Shown: positions 11,223 to 32,402 of the stretch, piece after piece
Layout of the letters: the number at the start of each line of letters is the position of its first letter
Numbering within the stretch: position 1 is the stretch's first letter
Translations under genes and position numbers: made by a program
Notes under the pieces: model-generated
What the model saw: only the letters and a program-made list of their open reading frames with translations
Database searches by the model: none
Told to the model about the DNA's origin: nothing
Assembly (NCBI GenBank): GCA_044892505.1
Contig: CM097883.1
Span: 448,632,001-448,696,000 of the forward strand
DNA from: Schmidtea nova
Lineage: Eukaryota
Direction of reading: 5' to 3'
Length of the DNA stretch: 64,000 nucleotides

Positions 11223-11314
11223 TTTCTACAATAATATATACATTCGACTTGTCATTTATTTTTGGTTTTTCTTGTTTTTATTTTTACATATTTACAGTTT
11301 TCCGCTTTATTTAT

Positions 11315-11671: not shown

Positions 11672-11795
11672 TTCTAAATTATATACATCATTTACTTTGT
11701 TTTCCTAGCTTTTTACAATTTTTATAATATCGATACCCATACTATTACGGTAATGCTTTGTTATTTACACTATTATTTACAGTCATAATCCGCCC

Positions 11796-14700
11796 CTATA
11801 CCATCATTATCGTCTTTTCCTCGTATCGTTCTTCATCTTCTATTTGTTTCCAGAATTCTTTACCTTTCGTTCTTCTTTGGAATTCTTGCTGTATCTCTTC
11901 TGGTATTTCTATTCTTTGCTTCATAATTTTAATATCTGGCCATTGTATGGCTGTCGCTTTGTTTCTCTTTCTGTATCTCCAATATATTATCATGCTTGTC
12001 GTCATTATCCCATATGCTATTAATATTCCTATACTGATTAATCCTATTACTGTTTTTCCACGGTTTGTTTCTCCTTTATTCTGGTTCGCTTTTATCTCAT
12101 TTTGGGTTTGAGCCTCTGGCTTCCTCTCTTTCTGTATTTGACTCTTAACTTTGTTCATTACTTCTTGTGTAGACCAATGGCGATTTAGTAGTTGTTTGAC
12201 GTTATTTTCTTTTGTTCGGTTTTCCACGTTTCCTGGTTCGATCTGCTGTTGTAGTTTCTCTGAGATCTGATATAATCCGCATTCTGGGTTTTCTGAACCT
12301 TTACTGGTGAAGGTACATATCGCGTATGTCCTATTTACTTCCATTTTCTTTAATTCGACTTTTTCTTTATTCTTTATTTCTTTACAGTGGGTTAGGTTGT
12401 CTTCTTCCCCTTCTGGGTTATGCTTTGTCCAACATATTCCTTTAACTGTCTGATCGAGTCCTGTTAATGTCAGAGTTCTTTCTGTCTTTGTTAATTCTTC
12501 TTCATCGAATTTCAGTATTTCTCCTTTTTGGAATGTCTTGCAATGCTCTATTCCCTCTTGGATTCCTCTCTCCCAGATACATATACTTCCTTCTTCATTC
12601 ATTTGTATTTCTTGTATTTCGATTTCCTTGTTTGTTTGTGATTCGTCGCTTGTCTGTACTTGGTATTCCTTCCTTGGTTCGTTGTATGTTCCCCAGCATA
12701 GTTTGTTGCTACTTGTTTTCCTTATTGTTATGGCCATTTGTTCTATTATTATTCCTTTATCGATGCGTTTGGACATTGCTAGTATTAATGCTATGCATAC
12801 GCACTCCTGTTGGGGTGATATTCTTTCTCTCGTTTTATTGGTGCTTCTCTCCCCTTCTCTTGGTTTGTTCGTTGTATTTTCCTTCTGAGTTGCTGGTCGA
12901 TCTATTGTGGTTTTGATCTCTTTCTTTGTTGGTTTTACTTTGTACCACTCAAGTCTGGGCGTTTCATTTTTTTGACATACGACTGTCTTAGGTAGCCCTG
13001 ACTTCTTTTCCTTTCCTATTATACATATCCGATGCATGATTCCTCTGTCCATCCCTTCTATTCGTACTATATCCTGGTCGGATTTTCTGATTATGCATTT
13101 TAGTGGGTTATCTTTCCCAATTGGTTCATCCTCTCTATTCCAGCATATTTTCTCGACCTCCTGGACATTTACTATTTTTATCCCTGTTTGTAGGTTTGTT
13201 GCTTCTTCCCTATTGATTAATGTCAATATTATTGTTAGACCCAACCATCTTGAACTCTGCGATAGGCTTCTGGTTCGCCTTTCATATTTTTTCTCTTCGC
13301 CTTTAGTCTCTTTCGTTTCCTTGTCTTTGTTGTTTATTCCTAGTTTTCCGCTTTTTGCTTCTTTCTCTTTTGGTTCTTCTCGTGCTTTTTCTTCTAGCAT
13401 TTCTACTCCATGGCTTGTATTATCTATATTTAGCCATTGGGTTGTTGATTTTCTTGGGCTTATCTTGCGTATCCATATAGCTGATAACGCGATTATTACT
13501 GGTATGGTTGCTGTTAATATTCCTAAGCCGATTAGTTCTTTAATTTCTTTATTCTCGTCTGTTTGTATAGGTTCGCTTTGGTTGAACATTATTCCGTATT
13601 GTCCCTTTAGTTTTCTCATTAATTGTTCTCGTTCCTCTTGCTTTCTTTTGACTTCTTTGATAACTTCTTCAGGTGTCCATTTTGCTTGAGGGTCGGTTAT
13701 TGTTTTTTCTGCGTCCATTTGTTCATTCGTTTGGCTTAGTTCCCTGAATTCGAGTTTCCTTGTTATTCCTTTCGATGTTGCGTTCGCTGGTGTATAGTAG
13801 GTTTCGCATCTTTCTTGTTGGTTTCCTAGTGCGTCCGTCTTTTCTATTGTACATACTTCATACTCGCTATTAAATTGTAGTTTTTCGATCTTGATTTCTT
13901 TATTTGTTTTTCTGCACTCTCTTGATTGTCTTCTTATATGTTTCTGAACTATTATCCAACATATCTCTAATGTTTTATTCTCTATTTTCCATAATGTCAG
14001 AGTTGCTGATGTCTTTTTCTCGGATTTTGTCGTAACTTCTTGGCTTATCGGTTGTTTATTGTTTTTAAAGGTAGTGGTGTACTTCGGTTTCCCTTTGTTT
14101 CGTTGTCTTCTTTTATTTTTTCGTGTTAACGTTTTAGTTCTGGTTCCGGATGAAGTGGTGTATATTCCGCATTCTAGGTCGTTTATCGTTATCTGATCAT
14201 TTTTCTTTACCAGACATATTTCGTAAGTTTGTTTACTTTCTAAACCTTTTATTTGTATCGTCGTTGCTCCTGTGCTTGTTCGACATTGTGGTGTCTTTCT
14301 TTCATTCGTTTCTTTTTCGTACTTCCTCCAGCATACTCCTTTCACATTTGGTTCTATTTCTTTTATTTCTAATGTTATGTTCAGTTTCTGCTTGATTTGT
14401 TTATTTCTCTTCCTCGTTCTCCTTCGGAACTTTATTACCTCTCCAGGTTGGAATGTTTTACATTTTGTGGTACCTTTCTTGTTCCTCTCTTTCTCAAGTA
14501 GGCATAGTTTGTACGTCTTGTCTGCTCTTACTTCGGATACTTTAATTACTTTGTTTGTTGTGGGTTTTCGACTTTTCCTTATTTCATTTACGCCGATTTC
14601 TTCGTCATTCCTCGCCCAACATTTTATGTTAGTGTTCTGTGTATCTTCCACTTCTGTTATTGTCATAGTTTCAATTTCTATTCCTTCCTCTAATCGTTTT

Positions 14701-17700
14701 ATTATTATTAGTATGAGTGCTAAGCATAATACTTCCATTTGGTAAGACACTCTTTCGGTTTCGTTTGTGGCAATTCTTGTTTCGGGCCTCTCTATTGTAA
14801 TTCGTAGGGTTGGTGTTGTTTGCTTATCTATTGCCTGGGGTTTTTTATTTTCTGTTCTCTGTGTCTCTGTTCTTCCACATTTTCCGATGATGTAATCTCC
14901 TTTGGGTGACTGTTGTATTGTCATGGCTGCTTTAGGTGTTTGGTATTTTGCACATGCGATTGTGTTGTGTGATCTTGGATGTTTTTGTTTCCTAACGGTG
15001 CATATTTTGTACCAGGTGTCTAGATCTAGGTCGTTGATCTCTATGATCTCTTGCTCGTGTTTTGAGATTCTGCAATCCATCGGGCTATTTTGTTCCGTGA
15101 TTTTGTCCTTTTTTGACCAACATACTCGTTCGATTCCTTTTGCGTTTTTTATTTGTATTATTGCCCTTTCTTCACATGTCATTCCTTGACTTGGGTTAAT
15201 TAACGTTAAAATCACTGTTAATAATAGTAATTCTGGTTTGAAGAATGGTTTTATGGTTGATTTATAACTTGTTCTTTGGGTGTCATTTTTATCTCCTTGG
15301 TCGTTTTTTCCTTGTTCTCCATCTCCATCTCTTTGTTTTTCGTCTTCACTTTTCTTTTCTTCTTTGTCTCGTTTCTTGTCTTTTCTCTCGTTTTCTTCTT
15401 TATCGGGTGGTTCGTGATCGTTCGAATTTTCTGAGTTGTTACCGTCGTCACTATCTGTATTGTCATCTCCCCCTGGCTCGTCGAAAATGTCGTCCTCGAC
15501 ATTGATTTCTTCTATCAATTTTGCATATGCCAATGTCGTTAGATTACTTGCCTCAAATTCTTGTGTTTCTACTTGCTCCGGTATTGCTTTGTTAGTGGAT
15601 TTATGTTCCAAGATTTCCTTTTTGGCCTTGATCCAATTGTTGATGTATGTCTTCATCAATTCTTTCCATTTGCCTGTGTATTTTTCTTCTTTCGGGCTGT
15701 TTGTGATTCTTAGATCCTTTCTTTCCATAAACATCTTCAATATCTCTGGCCATTTATACGTTATTAAGGCACTTCTTATACACCAGTTTTGGTTATGTTC
15801 TGTAAACTTATTAATCCTGAATGCTGGTTCGTTAGTATTAGGATTTATCCACGTAAGTATTGATTCTGTTAGTTCGACGTTGTTCATCATTGCTAGTACA
15901 CTGGGTTTCTTGACCGTATCAGTTAGGTGATCTATTTCTTCCTGATTTGGGACGGTTTTTAGGAAGTTGACCATTTCCCAATTATGTGTTAGTAACGCTA
16001 CATCCAAAATTGAATTATCTTTATCTGTTTTACCTGTAAGTCCTGCACCTGCTTTGTATAGTTCCTCTAATACCTTTGTTTTCGTTTTGGCCCTTGCTGC
16101 AAATACCATAAGTGTATCTCCTTTCTCGTCTATCATATTCATATTGCTTCCGCAATTTAGCATTACTCTTGCAATCTCCATTACTTTTCTATCTTTGCCA
16201 TTTCGTAGAGCTCTATGTGGGGGCATTATTCCGTCCTTTGGTAGTAAAAATGTTACTGGCATCTCCTTTTTTATTATTACTATGTCGTTTCCGTTGTAAG
16301 TTCCTTTTGCGTATGCGTGTACTTTTTCAACTAATGCACCGAGTATTTCCAGTGCATGTTTACTATTCTCGAATTCTGGTAACAATTCTTTTGCTTTTTC
16401 TTGTATCGCATCTAGTCTAGCTTGGTATGGTGCTTCTGCTTTAAAGAGTGGTGTGAGTTTCTTGTTACTTTCTCTTTCTTTTTTCTCCAAAACCTGTTTG
16501 CATTTTTCGGGATGGTTTAAGATTTTCACTAATTCCTCGTACTCACTTACTATTGTCTGGTATTTCTCGTTAAAATTGTTTATGTCTTTGTATGTTATTA
16601 GTTTGTCAAATGGTTTCGCACACCATTTCCTAATCTTGTTGAATAAGGCTTCCTTCTCTTTATCGAATTTGTATTCTTCTTCATTCTTTGTGATGTTTAT
16701 GTTTCCTCTGTCTAATAAGGTTAGTAATGTCTTCTGATCACAAGTAAATTTCAGAAGATATCTTAACAACGCGTTTTGTCCTTCGCTGTATACTTCGTTT
16801 ATGTCTAAGACCCATGTATCATCTTCTGGTCGTTTCCATTTGACTAACTTACGGATCGTGTTGCATTTACCAATTTTGATTGCCTCTTTGATAATGTCTC
16901 CTTTAACTAGTTCGTCTATCTCCCAAGTGGAGTTAACTATTATGTATTTCAGCATTGGTTGGTGAGAACTCCATATTACGTGATTTAGCACTGTTTTGTC
17001 CTCTCTATCTCGTTCTGTCCAACTGAAATGGGCTTTTATCAATAAATCTACCATTTCTTTATCTGCTTGGTGGATTGCGGCTGTCATTAATGGAGTTTCT
17101 TGTTCACGATTCCCTACGTCCAAGTTTTGGTTTGTTTCTTTTGCGATTTTTAGGAATTCTTTTGCTCTTTCAATGTTTTTACACTCTATCGCATTATGTA
17201 AGGCTGGTTGTCCTCCTACATCTTTCAATAAGAGTATTTCAGGGATTTTTTCCAATAATTCAGAAATAATTGGTTCGGTTGGTAATCCTTGCGCGTAACG
17301 GCTAATCATATGTCTAATATCCCTTGATATGCCTGCTTCGTCTCTAACATGCCATCTTCCCATTATTTCTCTCGCCTTCAATATGATCTCTTTGTTTCTG
17401 ATTTCTTTTTGCCTTATTTCTGCTTTGTCGTCTTCAGTTACATTAGCTCTGAGCATATTTATCCTGGCTGTTTGTGATCTAGTTATTATTCGATTTTCTG
17501 GTGTTGTAGTTATCGTTTTAGGCACCTTTTTACATCTGCAGGTGTTTACATATATGGGTCGTATTAAGGGTCGATTTATTAGCTTAACTTTGACATTATT
17601 GTCCTTTTTGTATATAATTTCATAAGGTCCTCTTCCAGGTCTTTGGAGTTTCTTAACTGTTCCTGGTATTATTTCGGGAGTTTCTATTATCACCCAATCT

Positions 17701-20700
17701 CCTGGTTTTAGATCGTTCGCTTTAACATTTTTCTTCTGATCGTGTAAGTCCTTATAACTTTCCTGATAAAATTTAATGTTGAGTTCTGCCGTTTTCCATA
17801 TTTCCTGCATTCTTTCTTTGAATTTGGTTATGTAGTCGTCGTCTTCCATATATTGCGATAGTGGTGGCTGATACTCTAAATCTATGGGCATGTTGCATTC
17901 TCTTCCATACATAAGTTGAAATGGGCTTAGTTTTGTTGCTGCATGTATCGACATTCGGTATGCCATTAAACATAATTTTATGTATTCGTCCCAATCAGTT
18001 TGATGTCTGCTGACGTAATTTGATAACATTCTAATCAATGTACCATTGAATCGCTCCGTTTGTCCATTCGTTTGCGGGTGATATGGTGAAGTTCTCAATT
18101 TTGCTATTCTGAAATAGTTTGTTACCTCGTTCAATAGCTCGCTCATAAAATTAGTTCCTTGGTCTGTGAGAATTTGTTTTGGGGTTCCGTATCTGCAACA
18201 TATTTCTTCCACTAAAATTTTTGCTACAGTTTTTGCTTTTTGGTCTTGCATGGCAAATGCTTCCGGGAATTTTGTCAGATAATCTGTTATCACTAATATA
18301 TAAATATTTCCGTTTAGACTTTCCGGTAATGGTCCTATTACGTCCATTGCTATAGTTGTCATTGGCTCTGCTGGTATCGGCATTGGTTGTAGCGGGTTCT
18401 TCCATTTCTTCCCACTATCCTTTCTGGTTGCGCAAGTTAGACAATTTTTAATCCATTCTTTTATATCTTCTTCCATTGTTCGCCAATAATATTTTTGTCT
18501 CATACGATTTATTGTCTTCTTCTCGGACATATGGCCTCCTAATTTCCCATCATGGTACTGGATCATTATCTCTTTCCTTCTGTTTTCCGGTAAACACATC
18601 AATCTCTTTTCTCCGTCTTGTATTAACAACCATCCTTTATTTATTATGTAGCGATGTTGATATTTTCCTATATGTTCCTTTAATTCCTTATTCTCTTTGA
18701 ATACCTCCATGTTTCGAGATGTTAGGAACTCTATGATTTGTCCTAATTCTTTGTCTTCTTGTTGATCTTTCTTAAGCTCGCTAAAATCTAAATCTTCTGC
18801 TATTAATACACAAATTCGTTGTACATCAGGATCGGTTAATTCCGGAAATGTCAGTCTTGACATACAGTCTGCATTCGCATTTGCTCGTCCTGATTTAAAT
18901 TTTATGTCCGGTGAGTACTCCTGTAATTGCATTGCCCATCGCATTAGTCTACTAGATGTTTCCTTGTGCTGTCCTAACCATACAAGCGGTTGGTGATCTG
19001 TTGTTATGCAGATGATGTGTCCCCATAATAAATATTTAAAATGTTTTATTGCTAGTATAATTGCTAATGCTTCTCGCTCGGTTACCGAGTAGTTTTTCTC
19101 ATGCTTTTTGAATGTCCGGCTATAATATCCGATTACCCGTTCTTTTCCTTCATCGTCGTATTGTCCTAATACTGCTCCTGCTGCATATCCGCTTGCATCT
19201 GTTGCAAGTAGGAATGGCTTCTTAAAGTCTGGGTGTACCAATATGGGTGCGGTTATCAATTTATCTCTCAACGTTTCAAAGGCTGTTTGTTGTTCATCTC
19301 CCCATATGAATGATACATCTTTCTTTACCAGTTCCTGTATAGGCTTTGCGATTCCGGCGTAATCTTTTATAAACTTCCTATAATATCCACATAATCCGAG
19401 AAATTCTTGTATTTGGGTTATTGTTTTTGGTACTGGACATTCTTTTACCTTGTCGATGTTTCTAGGATCCGGTTCTTTTCCTTTTGCTGACACTATATGT
19501 CCTAAAAATGTAACCTTTTCTTTTGCCCAGTCACACTTGGATGGCTTGAGTTTTAACTTCCATTGTCTAAGTCTAACGAATACATCTCGAATATCCTGTA
19601 TGTGTTGTTCGAATGTACTAGAGTAAATCAATAAGTCGTCGATGTAGACCATGCACTGCTTTATTCCATGGGTGATGAAATTCATGCATCTCTGAAATGA
19701 TGCTGGTGCGTTCGTTAATCCAAATGGCATCTTTCGAAATTGATATAGGTCTCTACCGATGGTAAAGGCAGTTTTCTCTTTATCTTCTTCCTTCATTTTT
19801 ATTTGCCAATATCCGCTTTTCAGATCTAACGACGTAAAATATGCTGCTCCTTGTAATGTTAGTAGCATCTCGTTGATGTCTGGTAATGGGTAAGTATCTC
19901 GTTTTGTCACTGTATTCAATCTTCGGTAATCTATACAGAATCTCTGTGTTCCGTCTTTCTTCTTCACCATTACCACTGGAAATTGCCAGGGTGAACAACT
20001 TGGTTCGATTACTTCTGCATCCAACATTTTTTTCACTTCTGCTTCTGCTACTGCTTTCTGTGCTTCCGCTAATTTGTACGGCCTTAATGCAATTGGTGTT
20101 TCATCTGTTAATGGTATTGTATGTAGTGTGACATCACATGTTCCTAGATCCAAATCGGATGCTGCAAATATATCCTTATACTCTATCAGGAGTTTTTCTA
20201 ACTGCTTCCTTTGATCCTCATTTAATAATTCACTATCTATATTCCAGGTTGGCTCTTTATCTTTCTCTGCTCCTTCTATTGGTAGTTCGATATCCATCAT
20301 TGGGGTTAGTTTGCCTAATCTTTCGTTTTCGTAGATTATTTTGTCCTCTTCATCGAAGTTTACTATGTTTATTGGGATTTCTCCATCGTCATTTATGTTG
20401 ACTAGTCCTCTTGCCATTGGCAACGCTTTTCTTTTCTCGAATCTTTTACTTGGTTCGAAAATCATATCCCCTTGGATTATTGGATCTATTTTTACATAAC
20501 ATATTTTTTCCTTTCTTGCGGGTATGATCATTTGCTTTGAACTCGTCACTTTAGCTTCTATTGCGCATATCTGCCCTGTGCGATCCCTCAGTCTCATTGT
20601 TCCGAGATCGATTACAATTTCTTTAAATAATGCTGGCATCAAATCTGTTCCGATGATGCAAGGTACGCTTAACGCTGGTATGACTGCTACATACGTATCG

Positions 20701-23700
20701 ATTTCTGTATTTAAGTGGCGTATTTTTACCCACCATCTTCCTGCTACTTCTACAACTTCTTTGCTACATGCAATTACATGGACGTTTGTCCTTTCTATAT
20801 CTCGTCTTTGCTCTTGTGGTATCCATTTGATGTCGATGGCGGAAATGTTTGCTCCAGTGTCGATCATTGCTTCGATTTCTCTTCCGTTAATTTCTATTGT
20901 CGTGGTTAGTACTGGACCTGTGTTTGATGACATTACTGCGATCGTGTGTGTATCTCCTTGTGGATCTACGCTTCTACATCTTCTCATTTTATAATCTTCT
21001 GGTATCATGGGATATACATTTGTCATTGGCATCATTTGCATCGTGCTATTTTTTCCTCCTTGTAGTGGTTCTTGATACATGGTTGGTGGAGGTGCGTAAC
21101 ATTTCCATGCGTCGGCTGGATTCTTTTCGATGTATTGTGGTGCTTGGTTCTTATACACTTGTCCTCCTTTATAGTCGTCATCGTCGTCATCGTCGTCACT
21201 CGAATCATGTTGGGTTTTATATCCTTTCATCCTCTCCCATAAACCTTTTCTTTCTCTCTTGAGCTGTTGTCTTGCTTGTTCGTCATTCATTATCTTTTTA
21301 AATTTTCGTCCCACTTCTTCATCTGTTCCCTTCATTTTTGCTAATATCTTTAGGAGTCTTTTTATTCGGTGGATATCTTTTGAGTGACCGTGTAACACCA
21401 TCGTTTTCGCAAGGAATGGTAAAAATCCTACTACCATTTTCCAATTCACTTTCTTTTCTCTCTTGTAGATATCGAAACATGCTAACATTTGTGTTATTAT
21501 CACTCTGACGATTTGGATTATTAATATGACCCCCAGTATTCCAGCCATCATTTGTCCGAATATCAAGAATCTTCCCCACATTGCTTTCATCATGTTTTCT
21601 GTGGCTTTTTTGAAATGTGCTGGTGACAACAACAGTTCATAATTCGGTCCTTCTCGATAATCCGTTCCTCCCGTTATCGTTACGATATTTGACAATAATG
21701 CTTCTCTTCTCGCTGGGAATAATATATTCTGCCTTGCTGCTTCTAAATCCTTTGGACTATATATTCCATTGTTTGAGACATCCACGTCGCTAAATTGCCT
21801 ATCCTTTGACAACTGCATTAGCTCGAATTCTCTTGGTGCTATCACTTCGGATCTTCCTGGGAACATAACCCATTTACCATCTGGTTTCTGATAAAGCGGT
21901 CCATACGCATTACTACAGTTGAATGGATTTGGTTCAAACCCTGGTGGATTGATGATTCTCGTCACCGGTTGAACGTATCGTACTTTTCCTTTGTAATCGA
22001 TTTCTAACTCATTTGTACAGGTTCCAGGTTTCAACTGTGTTGTTGCTGCTAGCGACGCGTGTGTCTTTTCGCAAATGTATACATACATTGCTTCTCCAAC
22101 CACTCTCCCGAAATGTCCTTCTCTCAGTGGTAATAATGGCATCGCGCTATCTGGATTCGTAATCGCTACGGCCAATTTTGTCTTTAGTATTTCTCGATTC
22201 AGTATACAATCGTTATTGATCAGATCGTAATACACTTTTTGTAATGAGGCTTGTCCTCTATGGAATAGGAAATCCATTTTATTATTCACATACAAGTGTA
22301 GTTTGATATCCATTGTGTCGATTTTGGGTTTCGCATTTGGCACTTCTTGTTTTGACACATATATTCCTGGGTAATTCGTTTCGTATACCGTTGTACTACA
22401 CTTAAGGGTTGCTTTCCCTTTTATGAATCTCATTCCCACATCTTGATTTGTGGTTATCAATACTGTTGGTGTGGCTCTCATCTCTATTCGTTTTTCTCTA
22501 TGATCTGGTTTCAGTTGTCTTTTATTCTCTAAAGCTTCCTTGAGATGCTTTGCTCTAGCTTTGTCGTCATCGTCTTCTTCCTGAAACGTTTTTCCTTGGA
22601 TTTCGTCGAACTTTGCTCCTTGTAGCAGTTGTAACTGACATTCGTTCATCTTTGGTTTGTACACTAATGTTGACATTCCCGTTTGACACATGCTCCTGTC
22701 GATTTTACACATGGATAACGTTTTCATTTCTCCCGTTGTTGGTTCGAAGAATGCTTCGTAGCTTTTTAGTTCGACTATATACGTATCCATTACTACTAGG
22801 TTGGTTGCGGGTACTCCGAATATCGGGTAGGTTTCTCCTTGACAATATCCTTCTCCTCCCGTAATCCGTCCTGCTACATAGTACGTTTGTTGCATCATCA
22901 TTCCTGGCTTTCCTCTTATCTTGATTTTATCTCTTGTTGTTACTTCTCCATGTTTAAACAGTGCTTCGCAGTCTTCTCCTTGTAACACGATTGGTTCTCT
23001 TTCCGTTCCTGGCATGACAATTGCTGAATAATGTCCTCTCCCGCAGTAGAATGCGAATCTCGTCTTCTGCACTTTACATTCATTCACCATTGTCTTTATG
23101 AGTTCTGCTTCTTGATACACGTGGTACCATTGTTCCTTTTTAATCTTTTGCAACTCTACTGGAGTTGCATCTTTGCATTGCTCCGTACCTCTCAATGAAT
23201 ACTTTTCTCCTAACTTCATTTGGTCGCAATCAAACACTTCGAATGCTGTTGCGCTATCGGTGCTAATCATCCATATCAACATCATCATTATTATAGAACT
23301 CAAATTCATTGATGACTTCGCGTGTCCTGTTCCTGCTTGTTCTTTTTCTAACTCTTCCAATATTTTTTCGAATTTCTTTTTCATATTCTTCGCTTGCGTT
23401 TTCTTCTGGTTAGTTTTTATAAATGTTTCCCATCCTCCTTTGTTAATGACGTATGGTTCTATTTCTCTTGCTATAATTTTTGCGGTATTTTTTATATGTC
23501 TCTCTAATGCAGTGGGTTTTGGTCGACCTCTACTCAATGTCAACAAATTGTATATCGTGTATGCAATGGCTATTACGTATTTGTTATCCGTTTCCGCTCC
23601 TTCTGTCAGTTTCTTTATTAACATAGTGGTTCCTTGCCAGTCTAAATGGTTTGACTTCGTCTTTTCTTTTATGAATTCCGGTAAGATGGGTGCGATTGCG

Positions 23701-26700
23701 CTGTGTAGTGACTTCGCCTTTTCGCTTATCTCGGTTATACGCCAGTATTTTCTTAATTCCGGATCAATTATTGCCAATATTTCCATTATTGTTTTCGATA
23801 TCCATTCCTCCCCTTGACATATTGGTGTTGTCTCTTTTTCTTTCATCTCCGCAATTTTATTTAGTTTCCTTAAACATAATTCCCATTGATCTTGTCTCTT
23901 TTCGTCTTTATTTCTTACAACTACAGTTGTTGGGTCTGTCTTAGGTCTACCTCTAGGTCGTTTATCCATTCCTGTACCTGTTTCCACAAACCTTGTTGCC
24001 CGTCCTGTTTCTTCCGTAACATCTCTTGGTTCGTTAGCTCTTTCCTCTAACCATCTTTCCATTTCTTGCGTTAATTGTACGTTTTCGACATTCGCTCCTC
24101 TCGTTTCGTCTTCTGTCAAATCGTTTACTTCTTCTATTATTATTTCTTCTTCGACTTCTGTTTCTCCGGTGTTGGTTACTTGTATTGTCGTAGGTAATTC
24201 TTGTATTCTTTCGAAAATGTTATCGTCTTTTTCCTTTGTTAATTCGGTTAATTCTTCTATCATATCGTCGCTATCCGTTAAAATTTCGTCCACGTCGTAT
24301 GGTTGTGGTGGAGTCCTTTCTCTATTCCCTCTGGGTGTTGTCTCAGATCGTTTCGAACTTGTCCCTGGTGTTAGTACTGATTTCATCGGACTCGGCGTAC
24401 TTATACTTCCGTGTGGTTTACGGTTTTCTTCTTTATGTTTCAATGGTTGACCTGCTATTGCTTCTACTGTCAAGGTATTCATGAGATCTAGTTGTGCTGG
24501 CGTTATTCCAATTTCCAAACTGTTATCTAATGATCGTCCTTGGTGTTGTAAATGGAATGGTGGTTCGTATCTCAATTTCTTTTTAATATCTCGAATTTTT
24601 TCTGCTATTCCTACCCACAACTCTTCCTTATCCTTGTTTGGGTATATTATTCTTAAATGTACTTTCTGTGGAATTTCCTGCGAGAATTCTTGGTTTCTCC
24701 ATTTCCTAATTACATGGTCTAGTTGTTCCGGGCACCACTCGTTAACTCTTTTATATTCCGCGATTGCTTTTGCTACTTTACGCAAGCATGTTATATCTTC
24801 CCCATTTACCACGAAAAAATCTGCGAGACCCTTTATTAATTTTCTCTTACCGTGCGCATTAGTTTTTAATATTTCGACGAATTCTTCCGTTTTTTGCTTT
24901 TCCCTTTCTAACCACATGGCTGCTGTTTCTGGTCCATCTAGGTCTATTGGCGTAGCTTTCCTTGTCACCATGCAAACCCTTCCTATCTCTGGTTCGCAGT
25001 CATCTTCAATTCCTCTTTTATATTCTTCTTCATATTCCCCTTCTTTTGGTTCCCAACATTTTCCTTTCTCGTTCCATTGTTTTTCTACGGGTGTTCGTAT
25101 TCGTCTGTTGAGATTGAGTTCTTCTAATACATTTTCCCACTCTGGCCAAATTCGCCAATTTCGATAAATTTCTACTATTTGTTGTAATTTACGCACAACT
25201 TCTTTCCGTCGTTCCCGTTCTCTTTTCTCATCTTTAGCAGTTTCTCTTGGTGTATCGTCCATTCTGCTAACGTGGATTGTTTGGTGATTATCCCATATAC
25301 CGATTTTATATAATCGTCTCTCATCGTGATCCCATAATACATGTTCGTTGTATTGTATGATTATGTCGTCTTCCCATTCGTCTTCTGGTTCTCTTTGCAC
25401 TAGTGTCTCGTTGATGACATTTATTAATTCTTTAATGGTGCAATCCGCTACCACTTCAATTTCTTTGGTGTCTTCATTAGGCAATTCTACTGAAATTTTT
25501 AGATCTGTTATTTTCCCTTGTCTGAACATTGTTTTTCCCATTTTTGCGATTAATTTGTCGTGTGAGATCTGTGACCATCTCGTGTGGCTTGTGTCACGTA
25601 TGCACTCAATACATCGTTTCAATTTCTCGTATTCGCTTCTCATTAACTCTTTTCTATGTTTTTTGACTTGTGGTATGATTTGTTCTATCAGGGAATTTAG
25701 ATTCTTTCGCAAAACTCGTTCTTTCTCGTATTCTAACCGTGGTTTTATTCTCCGTTCGAAGCACGCGTTTGCTTCCCTTGCAACTTCTTGTAGGTTCTCT
25801 TCTTCTTTTTCATCACATATTGATAACAGAGTTATTTCTCCTGGCCATATACCTGTTTCTACTAAGTGCGTTCTTTTCTTTACGAGTCTATTCTGCGAAT
25901 AGATGAATTTGTTTTTGTATGAGCTCCCTAGTCTATCCTCTACCCATCTGTAGATATCGTCTGTAAATGGAGTTTTGATCCAGATTCTTGGTGTAGATGT
26001 ATTTATTATTATTGAGATGGTGTAATTGAGGAGTGGTTCCTCTATTAATTTCCCTACGTATCGATTCAACATGTCTACCTCCCGGTCTTGTAACCATTCT
26101 TTGTAGTTCATTTGTAGTAATGCTTTCATGAATTTCCGATATTGTTTCTTGTCCATGAACTCTTCGTTATATATTACCTCTAGCGAGTTATCTAATAATT
26201 TCTGGATTTCATCTACTTTTATCTGTGTAGGTTCTGAGGTCTTTATTACTTCTCTCTCTTTATTTTCGTCTTCGGATTCGTTTAATATGTCTCCTGCTAG
26301 GCTACTGATGTCACTATCTTCTTCCTCATCGGAAAACTCTCTGGTGGTATTTCTTAGCATATTAATATGTGCTATTTGGTTCGTTTCTCCTTGTATATTC
26401 TCCGTTGGTTCTGGTTCGTTTTTGTCAATTTCTGGTGTTGGTTCACTCTTGTCCTCTATTACTTCGACTTTTTCCAATTTCTTTCCCAACTCGTCAATCT
26501 CTTTTAAACGTCTTCTTATCATTTTTCCTTCAAATATTCGCCGGATTCGGGTTTCGTGACGTATTGGTGGTGGAATTTCTTCTGGTTCTATTTCTTTAAT
26601 TCTCATCACATTTCTTTTTGTTTCTACTACTCCCATGTTTTCCCATATATCCGTTAATTTCAATTTTACTGATGGTGCACCCTCTATTTGTAAGAACGCT

Positions 26701-28745
26701 TCTCTGGGCAGCTTTGTTACTCCTGGAATCATCTGGTTTACTTTGTTGAATAGTATTTCCACCTTTTCTTTTGCGTTATATTGGAATCGAAACATATGGT
26801 CGTTGGGCATGATTACCATCATTCCTTTTTTCCAAATTTTTCTTCTCTCTTCCTGGTTTATCTCGGTTTCCTCTCCCTTTTCTGCTTCTTTTTCTACTTC
26901 TTCATCTTTTTGTACTATTTCTTTTCGACTTTCGTTGTCGGCTGGATTCGGGTTTATCGAATTCATTTCCAGTGTGGTTTCTTTCTCGCGAGTGTCTGTT
27001 TGGTTTGTTGCTCTTAGCATGTTAATTCTTAGAGGTTGTCGTTCTCTTTCTTGCTGTTTTTGTTCATCCTCTCTTTGTATTCTTGCCCATTCCTGAGCGT
27101 GTCGTGCTTGACTTTCTCGATTCAATCGTTCGTTTTCGCTTTCTATTTTTCTCATCATGCTAATTTGCTGTTGATTGGTTTGCGGATTTCCTCTCGTCGT
27201 ATTGTTTATAAGTTCCGTCAATCTTTGGACTTCTTGCATTAAATGTATTTCTTTGGGGGTGGTTTTGTTCTGATTATTGTTATTATTGACTTGTTGGTTC
27301 CCATAATCTGGTCGGTTTACGGTATTTGCTTGATTTCCGTAATTTGGTCGGTTCCCATTACTCTGCCAGTTTCCTCGTTGATTACTTTTTTGTCCGCAAT
27401 TTCTTGAATAGTGGCCAGGTCGTCCGCAATTAAAACAGATTATTGTAGAACATCTGCTTTCCGAGTGTCCTTTAACTCCACATTTCCCGCAATTCAAATT
27501 TTGATAGCATTCTTGCTGCCAGTGTCCCAACTTTCCACATGTTTTACATTGTTTTGTTTGTCCTTGAGGGTTGTAGTTGTTTTGGTTTCCAAAGTTTTGC
27601 ACTTTATTTCCTTCATTCCTTCGTTGAGGGGGTGGTCGGTTTAATTGTTGCGAATTTGGAATATGATTGTTGAGATTTACTTCTGGTTCTGTTTGCGCTG
27701 TGTCCATGGCTAAATAAATTCTGCCTTCGCTTCCTATCATATGCAATTCAAATCGGTTAGCTGTTTCTAACGCTTGATCTATGGTTTTGCATCCTTGGCA
27801 TCCAACTTGTGCTCTTATGTCGGGTCTTCTTAGTCCTCCTATGAAGATAGCTGCCATTAACTCCTCGTTTATTGGACCTCCATCCTTGAATACCGATTTT
27901 GCTAATTTTTTCAGTTCGCTCGCGTATACCGCATTAGATTCATTCATCTTTTGTTTCCTCATTGAAAATTCTATGAATGCCTCGCTTAGCACTTTATTTA
28001 TTCCAAATGTTTGTTGGAAAAAATCCTTTATCGCTGTCCAGCTTGTAGGTGGATTGGTACCATTTTTTGCTTCCAAATATAGGTCCAATGCACTATCTTT
28101 CAAGTATAACTGTATTCTGCTTACCGTTGTTTCAGCTTTCCATTTGCATACTTCCACGAATATGCCAAATTCTTTTAAAAAGGTTTCTAATTTACTCGCA
28201 TCTCCGTTGAACGGTTCTCCTGAAAATTTATCCTTTATTTCTTCTCTTGGTTCACCCATTTCAATTCCGCTGTCTTGAGTTATTTTACTTTCGTTTCCTC
28301 TTGTTTCTAGTTCGTTGTTATGTTCGTCTTCCGTTTTACTCGAGCTTGAATCGCTTTCTGTTTCTCTTATTCCTTCGTTATCTGATATTATACTTTCGTT
28401 ATCACTCGCGTTGATTTCTATCTCTGGTTCTACCTCGTTTTCTACTTCTTCGATATTATCGTTGTTAGTTTCGTCGCTCTCTGTTTCACTTGCTTGGTTC
28501 TCCTTGGGTTCGGCTTGGTTTTCTTTGTTACTTGAGCTGTTGCTTATTATTGACAATTTATCGTTCTCGGTAATCGATTTATCTCTTATTATTTTCCTCG
28601 ATTTACTCCCTTGTGGGTTATCTTTGCCGGCTTTCTGCTTTTTTGTTGATTTTGTTGTAGTACTAGTTTTGTCTTTTTTATTACTGTTGCTATCGACTTT
28701 CTTTTCCGTTGGCTTTACTACGACACTCTTTGCTCCTTTTCTCAA
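11796..28745 (-). CDS. Giant Gag-Env-Pol-accessory polyprotein (5649 codons, no internal stop or frameshift)
   Basis: Single open frame with all motifs listed below. The track start is TTG; first in-frame ATG is at 28259; an in-frame TAG lies at 28781-28779. Confidence 0.95.
   Translation of the reverse strand: [5649 protein letters not shown]
11979..13250 (-). other. Polyprotein module: second internal-signal/FN3-like/TM membrane protein (about 3 FN3-like repeats)
   Basis: Signal-like [18 protein letters not shown]; repeats of CW...I.I.......Y.[28 protein letters not shown]. Confidence 0.65.
13471..15245 (-). other. Polyprotein module: first internal-signal/FN3-like/TM membrane protein (about 4 FN3-like repeats)
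   Basis: Signal-like [17 protein letters not shown]; VCW...[15 protein letters not shown], VCW...[15 protein letters not shown], ICW...[37 protein letters not shown]. Confidence 0.65.
15720..17235 (-). other. Polyprotein module: two blocks of ankyrin repeats C-terminal to integrase
   Basis: [50 protein letters not shown] match the G.TPLH.A ankyrin pattern with ~33-aa spacing. Confidence 0.85.
17530..18580 (-). other. Polyprotein module: integrase
   Basis: HHCC zinc finger ([10 protein letters not shown]...CLTC), DDE core ([21 protein letters not shown]), GPY motif (GRGPYEII). Confidence 0.95.
18850..20100 (-). other. Polyprotein module: reverse transcriptase and RNase H
   Basis: [40 protein letters not shown], YIDD (19646-19635), [22 protein letters not shown]. 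Confidence 0.97.
20590..20900 (-). other. Polyprotein module: aspartic protease
   Basis: [12 protein letters not shown] (DTG at 20861-20853) and CIIGTD. Confidence 0.92.
21400..23309 (-). other. Polyprotein module: signal peptide + chuvirus-like (class III, gB-like) glycoprotein + TM
   Basis: [22 protein letters not shown] then FEVFDC...EQC...[19 protein letters not shown]...GYCQG...TNYP...YVNNK...DCILNREIL...GEAMYVYIC...CTNEL...QPVTRII; the order of cysteines and motifs matches what I recall of chuvirus G; TM at ~21570-21480. Confidence 0.8.
23421..23888 (-). other. Polyprotein module: Bcl-2-like helical domain
   Basis: [20 protein letters not shown] closely parallels the Bcl-xL BH2 region (LEPWIQENGGWDTFVE); BH1 is divergent. 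Confidence 0.55.
27396..28230 (-). other. Polyprotein module: Gag capsid plus three CX2CX4HX4C zinc knuckles
   Basis: [12 protein letters not shown]...[11 protein letters not shown]...W...F; RKQKMNES...Y...L; knuckles [42 protein letters not shown] at 27548-27396. Confidence 0.92.
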
Positions 28746-29361
28746 GGGGATTACTTTTGTATACTCAATTTTCCTGTTCTATCTCTTATCGTTTTTCTGA
28801 TTCTTCTTGCTTGATTGATTGATTTGATTGATTTGTATATCTAAAATACAAAGGTCCTCAACGATACATTATTGTTATCGTCGCGCTTTTATTCCCTTTC
28901 TTTCGGGATTACTTATTACTGGGTTTTCATTATTTCCCAATTCCCAGATTCCCCTTTATTTTTAGTCTATTTAAATTATCTATAGACTGGTCACAATTAT
29001 CTATTTATGTCGTAATAATTATCTATACTTTATCCAATCAATTACTTTTCCCACAGTCTCCCAATTTATTGGTCGCTCGAGCGCTCTAATTCCCTGAGTC
29101 TTTCTGACTCGTTTATCATTATTTTATCATTTCTATTCATTATTCCCTGCTAGCAATTGTTTTTACTTATTCTGCCGGTTGTTCCGGTCAGCCCAAAAAA
29201 TTTTTACTATTCTCCTTGCATGCTTTACTTAAGGTTGCATAATCAGCTTTTCTCGCATTCTCTTAACTACTAGTGCGCACTACTCTAAATCTCGTCGACG
29301 ATTACACTATGGGTCTATATTCCCTCTATTACTATTTATCCGGATATATCTATAGTTCACT

Positions 29362-29585
29362 ATGGCTCTTCCGGCCTCAATTTTATATCTCACATGGCTC
29401 TATTGGCCTCAATTTAATCTCTCAAATGGCTATCTTGGCCTTAATTTAATCTCTCAAATGGCTCTCTTGGCCTCAATTTAATCTCTCAAATGGCTCTCTT
29501 GGCCTTAATTTAATCTCTCAAATGGCTCTCTTGGCCTCAATTTAATCTCTCAAATGGCTCTCTTGGCCTCAATTTAATCTCTCAT
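29362..29585. repeat. Tandem array, 7 x 32 bp, in element leader
   Basis: Unit atggctctcttggcctcaatttaatctctcaa at 29362, 29394 ... 29554. Confidence 0.92.
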
Positions 29586-29624
29586 AACGCCTAGCTAGGT
29601 CATTCAATATGGCTCATTGGCCTC

Positions 29625-29887
29625 AACCCTTTTTTTCAAGGGACAAACCGCTAATAACCCTTTGTTTCAAGGGACAAATCTCCTAACCCTTTGTTTCAAG
29701 GGACAAATCTCCTAACCCTTTGTTTCAAGGGACAAATCTCCTAACCCTTTGTTTCAAGGGACAAATCTCCTAACCCTTTGTTTCAAGGGACAAATCTCCT
29801 AACCCTTTGTTTCAAGGGACAAATCTCTTAACCCTTTGTTTCAAGGGACAAATCTCATAACCCTTTGTTTCAAGGGACAAATCTCCT
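29625..29887. repeat. Tandem array, 9 x 29 bp with internal hairpin, in element leader
   Basis: Unit aaccctttgtttcaagggacaaatctcct; ccctt...aaggg can pair within each unit; first unit divergent. Confidence 0.92.
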
Positions 29888-30363
29888 AAACTTTACTTAA
29901 CCGGTTAATCACAATTCCCTACTTCGCTAGCGATTAAAATTTCTCAGCTGAGTTATAACTACTTCTATGCGAGCTGACTATGCACCTTTTATTCTTTCAA
30001 AAATGTCATTTCTCTCTATTCTATCATAACTAATTCCTGATCAGTCTGCTTCAACTTTTTATTTATTTTTCTCTGTGCGCGCTTTACTCCATCAAGATTT
30101 CCCTATCTCTCTCCCCAACCAAAATATACAAAAAGATCGCGTTGGTCCATTAATGCAGGATGTGGTGATCAATCACATCACAAAAACTTTCCAACATTTG
30201 CGATGGGCCCCTTTCTATACACCTTGAATAAGTTGATCAACCGTACCTCCCAATGGATTCCTATCGGACTACTTTGCAGTAGCTCAAAAGTTATTTATAT
30301 ATGACAATTGTACCCATGATTTCATCATTAATAAACCAATAAAGTTCCATTCAAATTTATTTA

Positions 30364-30825
30364 TTATAAATATACAATAATTTTATCGTCTATCCTCAGG
30401 TTGCACATAGGACATAGGTCGCACTTGCTGGCACATATCTTACAAAAACGAAAATGTCCGCAAGGTAAAAACATAATTTGTATCTCGCTATCCCCACATA
30501 TATAGCACTGTCGGTATTTTTTCGCTGCTTCTACCCCTTGCGCCCTCCATCGATTGTATGTTGAGGTTAACTGTTGTTCTATTTGCCTGCACTTAATATT
30601 TAATTCTGCATTTTCTAATCGTGTTCTGTACCATTTGTAGCGGGTCTCTATGTCGATTTTACTTATTCTTTCTGTTATCTTTATTAATTCATCTGTTTCC
30701 TCAGTCTGTGTTGTGGGTTCTTGAAATTCAATTTCTCTAAATCGGTTTATTTCCTTCCCAATCGTTTCTAATGTTTCGCTTTCTGTGTTGAGGAATTCTT
30801 CGATTTCTTTCAGTTTTTCCTCCAT
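30364..30825 (-). CDS. Accessory ORF (153 aa): coiled coil plus C-terminal IAP/MDM2-type RING finger
   Basis: CYICGDSEIQIMFLPCGHFRFCKICASKCDLCPMCNLRIDDKIIVYL at the extreme C-terminus; ATG after tttattcAG-taa. Confidence 0.88.
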   Translation of the reverse strand: MEEKLKEIEEFLNTESETLETIGKEINRFREIEFQEPTTQTEETDELIKITERISKIDIETRYKWYRTRLENAELNIKCRQIEQQLTSTYNRWRAQGVEAAKKYRQCYICGDSEIQIMFLPCGHFRFCKICASKCDLCPMCNLRIDDKIIVYL

Positions 30826-31129
30826 TTACTGAATAAATAATCGTTTTAACTCTGTTATTTTTATCGTTTTTAAGGTAGTAATATGTTTCGTTTTGTATCT
30901 TTTAATATTTAACTCCCCCCGTGTTTCTGAAAATTGTCGTCCCGACAAATTATGCATGCATTTTAATTTTTAAATTCACTTTTGTTCACTGCCGTGTTGT
31001 TTATTTAATTTTTATACAATAATTTACATTTAATTATAACCTTTCTGTTTTTTATTAAATTAATTGACCCGAGCATTTTAAACCTCTCTGCAGATTTTAC
31101 GTTTACATTTTTCCGATAAAACGAAGTTG

Positions 31130-31147
31130 ATCCCGGCTGAGCCCCCA
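31130..31147 (-). promoter_or_regulatory. Primer binding site, tRNA-Pro type
   Basis: Minus strand TGGGGGCTCAGCCGGGAT matches the classical tRNA-Pro PBS TGGGGGCTCGTCCGGGAT at 16/18; begins 6 nt after the 5' LTR end. Confidence 0.85.
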
Positions 31148-31621
31148 AATTTATGCTGGGTTCATGGAGGGGTTAGATGAAAAATGCTCTAACAATGACT
31201 AGGGATCCCTCATCCATGATCATGCATAAAATTGCAATTTTACACTCAAGCGCCCTTGATTATTTCCCTATATAATCAAGTTGGTGATGCGCAGGGTGGT
31301 TAAACAATGATGGGCAGGTGAGCACTATTGCTAGTACTACTCCCCATTTATGTTTACGGGTCCATTGCTGCCGTTAGAAGGACTTACGCTTTAATCATCC
31401 CCTTAGGTATTCCGTGTTAATCTTTCAGAAAATTCATTTTTATCATTACTCAGTCTGCGAGAAGTATTTCAACGAATGCTCGCTTAATTATTTAATTATC
31501 TCTATTCGATATTTTGTAAACTGAATTTATACTTTTGTTCTATCTTTATTTAATCATTGGTAAAGTTAATTAAATCAATTTAAATGAACAATGAGATTCT
31601 TAAGCCAATGCAACAATTTAT

Positions 31622-32218: not shown

Positions 32219-32402
32219 TCTATAATTTATTTAGGATATTTACTCTATGATTAAATGATGTGAAAAATGAAACTGATCATAGGGTTATTTGGTTACGAAT
32301 ATGAATTATTAAAAACACAATACCAAAACTCAAAACAACATAACAAAAACACTGCTGAATATTAATATTTAATCACAATTTGAAAGATTTGACAATCAGT
32401 TC

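What the first reader, a model, noticed from the sequence alone, without database searches (positions are those of the whole stretch)
21400..23309. Chuvirus-type fusion glycoprotein embedded in frame BETWEEN gag and protease
In retroviruses and errantiviruses env is a separate ORF 3' of pol. Here a signal peptide, a ~570-aa cysteine-patterned ectodomain resembling chuvirus G (class III, herpes gB-like) and a TM lie between the Gag region and the protease in one frame. Gag, Env and Pol would be made 1:1:1, with Pol initially tethered to the cytoplasmic tail of the glycoprotein. Capture of viral glycoproteins by LTR elements is established (nematode Cer/Tas, insect errantiviruses), but I do not know this position as typical.
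Basis: partly seen in the sequence, partly recalled or inferred. Interest (0 to 1): 0.95.

Follow-up and report, generated by a model that had tools for sequence, protein, structure and literature searches.

The report
Known gag–env–pol giant flatworm-type retroelement

Summary
On the minus strand, one uninterrupted ORF (11796-28745, 5,649 codons) encodes, in order: Gag with three CCHC knuckles, about 1,300 aa of unknown sequence, signal peptide, 561-aa ectodomain with 14 cysteines, TM segment, protease, RT, RNase H and integrase. After integrase come ankyrin repeats and two further membrane modules. The ORF lies in a 29.5-kb LTR element (4750-34267) with 3.1-kb LTRs that differ by one mismatch and one 39-bp indel, TG..CA ends and a 4-bp target duplication.

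- The Env segment matches Pfam PF24664 (Monjiviricetes_fusion, E 2e-73).
- Its AlphaFold model (pLDDT 85.9) matches chu-like virus glycoproteins (E 2e-38) and herpesvirus gB (E 4e-14).
- It is not a local insertion. At least ten diverged relatives (28-39% Env identity) carry Env before Pol in one protein, and five also carry Gag first.

It is not new. Arkhipova & Yushenova 2019 (PMC6431247) described env in frame between gag and pol in Schmidtea Burro elements. An eLife 2026 paper (PMC13524379) reports GAG-ENV-POL elements with gB-type Env in flatworms, nematodes and bryozoans.

My additions are modest: no conserved Met before the internal signal peptide, alternating signal/TM topology, and a thrice-repeated candidate cleavage motif.

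The parts
4750..34267 (-). Whole LTR retroelement (29,518 bp), flanked by a 4-bp target-site duplication AAAG (4746-4749 and 34268-34271)
   Evidence: LTR pair by blastn; ends and flanks read directly
31154..34267 (-). 5' LTR (3,114 bp), TG..CA ends
   Evidence: It differs from the 3' LTR by one mismatch and one 39-bp indel.
4750..7824 (-). 3' LTR (3,075 bp)
31127..31147 (-). Primer-binding-site-like sequence starting TGG, 6 nt after the 5' LTR. Its complement ends in CCA, like the 3' end of a tRNA.
   Evidence: Read directly. A similar spacer followed by TGG is present at the start of relative L001. The tRNA was not identified.
30364..30825 (-). Accessory ORF (153 aa) with a C3HC4 RING finger, between the 5' LTR and gag
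   Evidence: Pfam PF13920, E 1.8e-11
29330..29944 (.). Two tandem-repeat arrays (32-bp and 29-bp units) in the leader
   Evidence: families D1 and D2
11796..28745 (-). Uninterrupted polyprotein ORF of 5,649 codons (first ATG at 28259); no stops or frameshifts
27396..28259 (-). Gag: capsid-like region and three CCHC zinc knuckles (aa 163-450)
   Evidence: Pfam zf-CCHC E 6e-10 and Retrotrans_gag E 5e-4, the latter below the curated cut-off. Gag N-terminal similarity to relatives.
23244..23309 (-). Internal signal peptide of Env (aa 1813-1834)
   Evidence: Sequence. An equivalent hydrophobic segment plus a small-residue motif, followed by Y/F-D-C, is present in 16 relatives. A Met before it is not conserved.
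21570..23243 (-). Env ectodomain, class III (gB/chuvirus-G) fold, 14 conserved cysteines
   Evidence: PF24664 E 2e-73. AF2 pLDDT 85.9. Foldseek against PDB and BFVD. Cysteines conserved 13-14 of 14 in full-length relatives.
21474..21569 (-). Env transmembrane anchor (about aa 2393-2424)
   Evidence: Highest hydropathy of the ORF. Part of the long helix 563-618 in the model. A hydrophobic segment at the same place in most relatives.
20904..21473 (-). Env cytoplasmic tail and linker to the protease (about 190 aa, with an Asp run)
20631..20903 (-). Aspartic protease (aa 2615-2705)
   Evidence: Pfam RVP E 2e-7
19491..19967 (-). Reverse transcriptase (aa 2927-3085)
   Evidence: Pfam RVT_1 E 1.7e-37
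18915..19304 (-). RNase H (aa 3148-3277)
   Evidence: Pfam RT_RNaseH E 1.7e-38 and RT_RNaseH_2 E 4.3e-37
18021..18590 (-). Integrase: H2C2 zinc domain and catalytic core (aa 3386-3575)
   Evidence: Pfam Integrase_H2C2 E 1.8e-20, rve E 3.6e-11
16938..17201 (-). Ankyrin repeats (aa 3849-3936), in frame after integrase
   Evidence: Pfam Ank_2 E 3.9e-15
11799..15245 (-). Two paralogous C-terminal membrane modules. Each has a signal-like segment, repeated Cys-containing units, a TM segment and a short tail.
   Evidence: Hydropathy. The modules are 30% identical, E 4e-43. No Pfam or PDB match. AF2 model unreliable, pLDDT 39.
9846..11222 (-). Accessory ORF (458 aa): TRAF-like protein with a TRAF zinc finger and a MATH domain, no RING detected
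   Evidence: Pfam MATH_2 E 9.6e-21, zf-TRAF E 2.8e-7. About 25% identity to animal TRAF2/TRAF4-like proteins, which do have a RING.
8027..9733 (-). Two further ORFs (353 aa, coiled-coil-like; 200 aa with a hydrophobic stretch) before the 3' LTR
   Evidence: Only weak Pfam matches.

Best explanation
This is an intact, very young copy of a giant Ty3/gypsy-type endogenous retrovirus-like element of the Burro kind described in dugesiid planarians. Its envelope gene is a class III fusion glycoprotein of the chuvirus/Monjiviricetes type. The gene is not a separate ORF after pol but a module inside the polyprotein, between Gag and protease.

Shown:
- the element's anatomy and the single ORF;
- the family and fold of the glycoprotein;
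- conservation of the Gag-Env-Pol order, the internal signal peptide, all 14 ectodomain cysteines and the TM anchor in relatives that share only 28-39% Env identity.

Inferred mechanism. The polyprotein is translated as one chain, with Gag and the roughly 1,300-aa spacer in the cytosol. The internal signal peptide then directs the ectodomain into the ER lumen, where host signal peptidase cuts behind it. The TM segment stops transfer, so PR-RT-RH-IN and the ankyrin domain are made on the cytosolic side, first tethered to the Env tail and later freed by the element's own protease. This would resemble the membrane-threaded polyproteins of flaviviruses. After integrase, two more signal-like/TM pairs would place two further ectodomains in the lumen.

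Env, Gag and Pol would then be made in equal amounts. Env would serve membrane fusion during cell-to-cell or host-to-host spread of particles.
For: - Single ORF.
- Domain order.
- LTRs with one mismatch and one 39-bp indel in about 3.1 kb, TG..CA ends, 4-bp TSD.
- Glycoprotein family and fold: PF24664 E 2e-73; AF2 pLDDT 85.9 with a 48-residue central helix and a C-terminal TM helix; gB fold matches; chu-like virus G matches.
- Same order in relatives: P0001-P0004 run CCHC, PF24664, PR, RT, RH, IN. P0020 has all three parts. P0160, P0008, P0010, P0016 and P0014 have Env before Pol.
- Internal signal peptide conserved in 16 relatives, mostly with no Met directly before it. This argues against separate initiation and for an internal signal sequence.
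- Cysteines conserved 13-14 of 14 in full-length relatives.
- Hydrophobic segments alternate as signal-like, TM, signal-like, TM, signal-like, TM.
- Published description of the same architecture: PMC6431247 section 7 and PMC13524379.
Against: - No RNA or protein evidence was available. Splicing could give a separate env mRNA, or remove env from a Gag-Pol mRNA, and this cannot be excluded.
- A second, weaker hydrophobic stretch follows the TM segment (about aa 2445-2463). If it spanned the membrane, the topology would be wrong for Pol. Relatives and chuvirus G proteins also conserve this region, and the model shows short helices there, so I read it as membrane-associated rather than spanning.
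- The host was not identified by any tool, and no Burro reference sequence could be fetched. 'Burro-like' therefore rests on matching the published description, not on a sequence comparison.
- This copy lacks domains that the paper lists inside Burro-1 ORF1 (MATH-TRAF, BCL2, BIR were not found in the ORF by Pfam).
Confidence: 0.85

Rival explanations
1. Env is not made from the polyprotein. Like retroviral env, it would be expressed from a spliced subgenomic mRNA, or by initiation at the Met of aa 1813. The in-frame position would then be a by-product of a compact genome, and Gag-Pol might be made from a message with env spliced out.
For: In this copy a Met sits directly before the signal peptide. 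Retroviruses and errantiviruses use spliced env mRNAs (established knowledge).
Against: The Met is not conserved. Most of the 16 relatives have no Met directly before the signal-like segment, yet the frame is kept open through Gag, Env and Pol in at least five diverged lineages. Keeping the frame would be unnecessary if env were always spliced. Even so, a spliced message that borrows an upstream start codon cannot be excluded from DNA alone.
Confidence: 0.2
2. The Env module is retained but no longer serves entry. It could act in receptor interference, in cell-cell fusion within the host, or only as a membrane anchor that gathers Pol and Gag at membranes for intracellular retrotransposition.
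For: Thousands of Burro copies are reported to propagate within planarian genomes (PMC6431247). Solo chuvirus-type glycoproteins in mosquitoes have been proposed as antiviral (PMC7642597).
Against: The full set of class III features is conserved at 28-39% identity across lineages: signal peptide, all cysteines, central helix, TM and tail. This fits selection on a complete fusogen. Nothing here separates entry from other membrane roles.
Confidence: 0.1
3. The glycoprotein segment is a secondary insertion (an endogenous chuvirus fragment) or an assembly chimera peculiar to this locus.
For: None found.
Against: The same order occurs in at least ten independent, diverged proteins from other assemblies. 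The frame is continuous and the base composition is uniform (A-rich coding strand) across the whole internal region.
Confidence: 0.01

Closest known systems
Burro / GYPSM1 giant gypsy-like LTR retrotransposons of Schmidtea mediterranea and Dugesia (Girardia) tigrina (Grohme et al. 2018; Jurka 2007; Arkhipova & Yushenova 2019, PMC6431247)
   Same: - Total length about 30 kb, with kilobase-scale LTRs and tandem repeats.
- One giant ORF1 (4,873 and 5,140 aa are reported; 5,649 codons here).
- Gag with three CCHC knuckles, as reported for S. mediterranea.
- env in frame between gag and PR, with hits to mononegavirus-type glycoproteins.
- PR-RT-RH-IN order.
- Ankyrin, RING and TRAF/MATH accessory domains, which the paper says may sit inside the polyprotein or in separate ORFs.
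   Different: - In this copy MATH/TRAF is a separate downstream ORF and RING a separate upstream ORF.
- Pfam found no BCL2, BIR, SUMO-like or dUTPase-like domains.
- The two C-terminal membrane modules and the INMLR motif are not mentioned in the paper.
- The paper reports HHpred similarity to gypsy Env (F-type). Here the only Pfam match is PF24664 and the fold is gB-like class III.
- No sequence comparison with Burro was possible.
GAG-ENV-POL 'errantiviruses' with HSV/gB-type ENV in Platyhelminthes, Nematoda and Bryozoa (eLife 2026, PMC13524379), and the non-canonical nematode ERVs of Sacco et al. 2022 (J Gen Virol; cited there, not held in the library)
   Same: Ty3/gypsy pol, a class III gB-type Env with conserved cysteine bridges, and Env placed before Pol.
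   Different: Those are described as three ORFs (GAG, ENV, POL) with gaps allowed between them and are of ordinary size. Here all three are fused in one frame inside a 29.5-kb element.
Anakin: mosquito BEL/Pao elements that captured a chuvirus glycoprotein (Dezordi et al. 2020, PMC7642597)
   Same: An LTR element carries a chuvirus-type, gB-like glycoprotein as its envelope. Young copies have near-identical LTRs.
   Different: They belong to a different retroelement superfamily (BEL/Pao, not Ty3/gypsy). The passages I read do not give Anakin's env position or reading frame.
Chuvirus (Jingchuvirales) G and herpesvirus gB, class III fusion proteins
   Same: Pfam family, cysteine pattern and predicted fold.
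   Different: Identity is only 18-27% to stand-alone chu-like G proteins and about 10-12% to gB. Here the protein is a module of a retroelement polyprotein with an internal signal peptide, not an N-terminal one.
Flavivirus-type polyproteins (comparison of mechanism only)
   Same: Cytosolic and lumenal modules would alternate, set by internal signal and stop-transfer segments, with processing shared between host signal peptidase and a viral protease (inferred here).
   Different: There is no homology, and the processing is not demonstrated here.

Membership tests
Class III viral fusion glycoproteins (gB / rhabdovirus G / GP64 / chuvirus G) | Multi-domain beta-rich ectodomain fold shared with gB | tested here: met
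   AF2 model with pLDDT 85.9. The top 50 PDB matches are all gB, E 4e-14 to 2e-11, probability 1.00. TM-scores are only 0.2-0.4, as expected when a monomer model is compared with pre- or post-fusion trimers.
Class III viral fusion glycoproteins (gB / rhabdovirus G / GP64 / chuvirus G) | Long central alpha-helix that forms the trimeric core | tested here: met
   Helix at model residues 337-384. Trimer formation itself was not tested.
Class III viral fusion glycoproteins (gB / rhabdovirus G / GP64 / chuvirus G) | Type I topology: signal peptide, ectodomain, single C-terminal TM anchor, cytoplasmic tail | tested here: met
   The signal peptide is internal to the polyprotein.
Class III viral fusion glycoproteins (gB / rhabdovirus G / GP64 / chuvirus G) | Internal fusion loops and membrane-fusion activity | not testable with these tools
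   Model coordinates could not be inspected, and activity cannot be computed.
Pfam PF24664 Monjiviricetes_fusion (chuvirus-type G) | Score above the curated gathering threshold (27 bits) | tested here: met
   247.9 bits, E 2e-73. Relatives score 281-328 bits.
Pfam PF24664 Monjiviricetes_fusion (chuvirus-type G) | Conserved cysteine framework shared with stand-alone viral G proteins | tested here: met
   In the 84-sequence alignment A1, five Cys columns are invariant and nine more are conserved at 90% or above.
Ty3/gypsy (Metaviridae) LTR retroelements | PR-RT-RNase H-IN order, LTRs with TG..CA ends, 4-6 bp target duplication, PBS next to the 5' LTR | tested here: met
Ty3/gypsy (Metaviridae) LTR retroelements | Placement of RT within the Ty3/gypsy clade by phylogeny | not tested
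   Only Pfam domain matches and the domain order were used.
Burro (giant planarian gypsy-like elements) | About 30 kb, giant ORF1 beginning with Gag/CCHC, env in frame before PR, accessory apoptosis/ubiquitin-type domains | tested here: met
   set against PMC6431247 section 7.
Burro (giant planarian gypsy-like elements) | Sequence similarity to Burro-1 to -4 / GYPSM1 | not testable with these tools
   No reference sequence was reachable, and the Grohme et al. paper is not held.
Burro (giant planarian gypsy-like elements) | Host is a dugesiid planarian | tested here: inconclusive
   AT-rich flanks (25-30% GC) and TRAF-type neighbours are compatible. Exact-protein look-ups found nothing. The relatives carry no organism names.

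The most novel reading that the evidence does not exclude
The element may be a membrane-threaded retroviral polyprotein. Three type I membrane modules (the fusogen before PR and two paralogous, uncharacterised ectodomain modules after integrase) would be interleaved with cytosolic Gag, enzymes and ankyrin repeats. Internal signal peptides without their own start codons would set the topology. Host signal peptidase and the element's protease would cut the chain, the latter at a thrice-repeated (R/H)-INMLR-(A/N) motif. Such a processing scheme, and the two post-integrase modules as possible receptor-binding or immune-modulating partners of the fusogen, are not described in the papers I could read.
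Probability: 0.35. Interest if true: 0.55.

Novelty: already known. Interest (0 to 1): 0.3.

Why it matters
The element shows how far a retroelement can move towards a complex virus. It is a 26-kb coding unit with a captured RNA-virus fusogen and host-like signalling genes (TRAF, RING, ankyrin), all under one pair of LTRs. That point has been made in print since 2019. The value of this locus is as a clean specimen: the giant ORF has no breaks and the LTRs are nearly identical. It could anchor descriptive work on how a glycoprotein inside a polyprotein is expressed and processed, and on what the extra membrane modules are.

Tried and rejected
- A sequence search of the Env segment against PDB chains gave only chance hits, E 0.4 and above. 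The fold search was needed.
- The word-indexed protein search with Env alone returned two unnamed relatives, so viral names came from the BFVD fold search instead.
- Cluster look-ups gave almost no names: one beetle endogenous 'Glycoprotein'.
- Exact-sequence look-ups for the TRAF-like and RING ORFs found nothing. The giant ORF exceeds that tool's 5,000-aa limit, so the host stays unidentified.
- Rfam and tRNA scans of the window were empty.
- Pfam at E up to 1 found nothing credible in the 1,300-aa Gag-Env spacer or in the C-terminal modules. PDB phmmer on the modules found nothing.
- The AF2 model of a C-terminal module had pLDDT 39. I therefore did not run a fold search on it.
- A furin-type motif in a disordered Env loop (aa 2083-2086) is not conserved in any of 18 relatives. 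I do not treat it as a priming site.
- The Troyka paper is irrelevant, since those elements have CG..CG ends. The Grohme 2018 and Sacco 2022 papers are not held.
- The alignment tools printed consensus lines on their own. I used none of them.
Full report
**What is there**

The minus strand carries one stop-free ORF from 28745 to 11796, 5,649 codons long, with its first ATG at 28259. It sits inside an LTR element spanning 4750-34267.
- The LTRs are 3,075 and 3,114 bp. They differ by one mismatch and one 39-bp indel.
- On the element's strand they begin TG and end CA, and a 4-bp duplication (AAAG) flanks them.
- Six bases after the 5' LTR lies a 21-nt sequence starting TGG. Its complement ends in CCA, like the 3' end of a tRNA.
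- The internal region has an A-rich coding strand; AT skew on the plus strand reaches -0.5.
- The near-identity of the LTRs and the unbroken ORF indicate a very recent insertion.

**Domain order**

Pfam gives the following order along the ORF:
- a weak Retrotrans_gag match and three CCHC knuckles (aa 213-450);
- about 1,300 aa without credible matches;
- PF24664 Monjiviricetes_fusion (E 2e-73) within aa 1813-2520;
- retroviral protease (aa 2615-2705);
- RT (aa 2927-3085);
- RNase H (aa 3148-3277);
- integrase (aa 3386-3575);
- ankyrin repeats (aa 3849-3936).

The finding's coordinates are accurate. Position 23309 is the Met before a signal-like segment, and 23243 is the first residue after it. 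The ectodomain has 561 aa with 14 cysteines. The strongest hydrophobic segment of the whole ORF follows at aa 2390-2427.

**Is the glycoprotein chuvirus-type and class III?**

Yes, on four lines of evidence.
- PF24664 is the only Pfam family matched.
- An exhaustive HMMER search of 1.84 billion representatives found 935 relatives in two tiers. About 25 share 28-47% identity and lie inside long polyproteins or their fragments. A large second tier of stand-alone glycoproteins of about 650 aa shares 23-27% identity.
- An 84-sequence alignment shows 14 invariant or nearly invariant cysteine columns. It gave an AlphaFold model with mean pLDDT 85.9, a 48-residue central helix and a C-terminal membrane helix.
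- Foldseek against the PDB returned herpesvirus gB for all top 50 matches (E 4e-14 to 2e-11). Against BFVD the top matches are glycoproteins of chu-like viruses, Tacheng Tick Virus 4, Wenling crustacean virus 14 and a xinmovirus (E 2e-38 to 2e-29, TM 0.5-0.6). Rhabdo-like viruses, nyaviruses and gB follow further down.

Plain sequence search of the PDB found nothing.

**Is the position peculiar to this locus?**

No.
- Searching with the whole polyprotein but scoring only the Env region found four proteins of 3,700-4,057 aa with 37-39% Env identity. In all four the order is CCHC, PF24664, protease, RT, RNase H, integrase.
- BLAST against all fetched proteins shows Env before Pol in P0160, P0008, P0010, P0016, P0014 and P0020. 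It shows Gag before Env in P0006, P0011, P0020 and P0021.
- P0020 (28% Env identity) is a compact version with all three parts.
- Some relatives have a second protease or ankyrin repeats between Env and PR.
- Two related contigs were fetched. In L002 the Gag part is a separate called ORF in another frame, ahead of a 4,844-aa Env-Pol ORF. That is one change of frame, and I could not tell whether it is a break or programmed. L003 has the region split over six called ORFs, so at least five interruptions, whose types I did not determine.
- The spacer, the ankyrin region and the C-terminal modules of the window's element have no BLAST-detectable counterpart in the relatives.

**How it probably works**

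In 16 relatives the segment before the conserved Y/F-D-C start of the ectodomain is a hydrophobic stretch ending in small residues, like a signal peptide. Most have no Met directly before it. The frame is nevertheless kept open from Gag through Env into Pol in several diverged lineages.

This fits translation of one chain with an internal signal sequence better than separate initiation of env. The inferred topology is:
- Gag and the spacer in the cytosol;
- the ectodomain in the ER lumen, cut free by signal peptidase;
- one stop-transfer anchor;
- PR-RT-RH-IN in the cytosol, first tethered to the Env tail.

All 14 ectodomain cysteines are conserved in nearly all relatives, which argues for continued selection on the fold. 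A furin-type motif in a low-confidence loop is unique to this copy, and class III proteins do not need such priming.

These steps are inferred. Nothing here shows RNA structure, processing or fusion.

**Comparison with what is known**

- Arkhipova & Yushenova 2019 (PMC6431247, section 7) describe Burro elements of Schmidtea mediterranea and a Dugesia tigrina relative. The elements exceed 30 kb and have an ORF1 of 4,873 or 5,140 aa. Gag carries three or two CCHC knuckles. The accessory domains are MATH-TRAF, RING-type, BIR, BCL2 and ankyrin, and they can sit inside the polyprotein or in separate ORFs.
- That paper also reports an env region between BCL2 and PR with hits to arthropod and fish mononegavirus glycoproteins. 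[quoted passage not shown]
- The eLife 2026 paper (PMC13524379, preprint 2023) reports that Ty3/gypsy elements of Nematoda, Bryozoa and Platyhelminthes carry only HSV/gB-type ENV, arranged GAG-ENV-POL. It cites Sacco et al. 2022 for nematode elements that captured an RNA-virus glycoprotein. It also notes that the chuvirus-like glycoprotein of mosquito BEL/Pao elements (Dezordi et al. 2020, PMC7642597) is structurally similar to gB.

Each component of the finding is therefore in print. One point differs. The 2019 paper reported HHpred similarity to gypsy Env (F-type), whereas here the only family matched is PF24664 and the fold is class III, in line with the later paper.

**Membership**

The Ty3/gypsy, PF24664 and class III structural criteria were tested and met. 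Burro membership rests on agreement with the published description. I could not fetch a Burro sequence, and no tool named the host.

**Additional observations in the element**

- After the ankyrin repeats the ORF continues with two paralogous modules (30% identity, E 4e-43). Each has a signal-like hydrophobic segment, repeated Cys-containing beta-rich units, a strong TM segment and a short tail. The hydrophobic segments therefore alternate along the chain, which would keep all enzymatic parts on one side of the membrane. These modules lie where retroviral env usually lies. They have no Pfam or PDB match, and the model was unreliable.
- A motif (R/H)-I-N-M-L-R-(A/N) occurs three times against 0.003 expected: about 120 aa after the last zinc knuckle, 220 aa further on, and just after the integrase region. 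There are no other near-matches, and the three copies differ at synonymous sites. I read these as candidate protease sites.
- Separate ORFs encode a RING protein upstream of gag and, downstream of the polyprotein, a TRAF-like protein without a detectable RING.

**Verdict**

Interest is 0.3. The remaining interest lies in the processing scheme and in the uncharacterised C-terminal membrane modules.

The N run at 60573-60782 was left alone, and nothing in the window looked human.

Noticed in passing
window 11799-15245 (-), aa about 4500-5649 of the polyprotein: Two paralogous type-I-like membrane modules follow integrase and the ankyrin repeats in the same frame. Each has a signal-like segment, repeated Cys-containing units, a TM segment and a tail. 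They share 30% identity and sit at the position where retroviral env normally lies. No Pfam, PDB or relative match was found.
   Followed up: partly
window about 27010-27024, 26350-26364 and 17446-17460 (-); aa 574, 794 and 3762: The motif (R/H)-INMLR-(A/N) occurs three times in the polyprotein (0.003 expected). It is conserved at the protein level but not at the nucleotide level, and the third copy lies just after the integrase region. These are candidate protease cleavage sites. The motif is absent from the diverged relatives.
   Followed up: partly
window 9846-11222 (-): An element-encoded TRAF-like protein has a TRAF zinc finger and a MATH domain but no detectable RING, unlike its nearest animal TRAF2/4-like homologues (about 25% identity). 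It could act as a decoy in host signalling.
   Followed up: partly
window 30364-30825 (-) and 29330-29944: A 153-aa C3HC4 RING ORF lies in the leader between the 5' LTR and gag. It is followed by two tandem-repeat arrays with 32-bp and 29-bp units.
   Followed up: partly
window 40680-45613 (-): A second, ordinary-sized Ty3/gypsy-type LTR element has LTRs of about 350 bp (96-98% identical). Its protease, RT/RNase H and integrase matches are spread over several separate ORFs, so pol is interrupted several times. I did not classify the interruptions.
   Followed up: partly
window 51153-57422 (-): A third LTR-bounded retroelement has repeats 86-88% identical, about 5.8 kb apart. It is unusually GC-rich (45-46%) with strong GC skew. 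RT and RNase H matches are split over several ORFs, so this is an old, degraded copy.
   Followed up: partly
window 58430-59041 (-): An ORF with RING and TRAF-type zinc-finger matches lies outside any recognised element. It may be an exon of a host TRAF gene, and nearby short direct repeats lie at 58975-59171.
   Followed up: no
window 8000-30000: The internal region of the giant element has a strongly A-rich coding strand (plus-strand AT skew -0.3 to -0.5). The related contigs L001-L003 share this (A 0.39-0.40).
   Followed up: no
L001:1-40 compared with window 31127-31153: A diverged relative (37% Env identity) keeps the same TAAATT spacer followed by a TGG-initiated primer-binding-like sequence next to the end of its LTR.
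   Followed up: no
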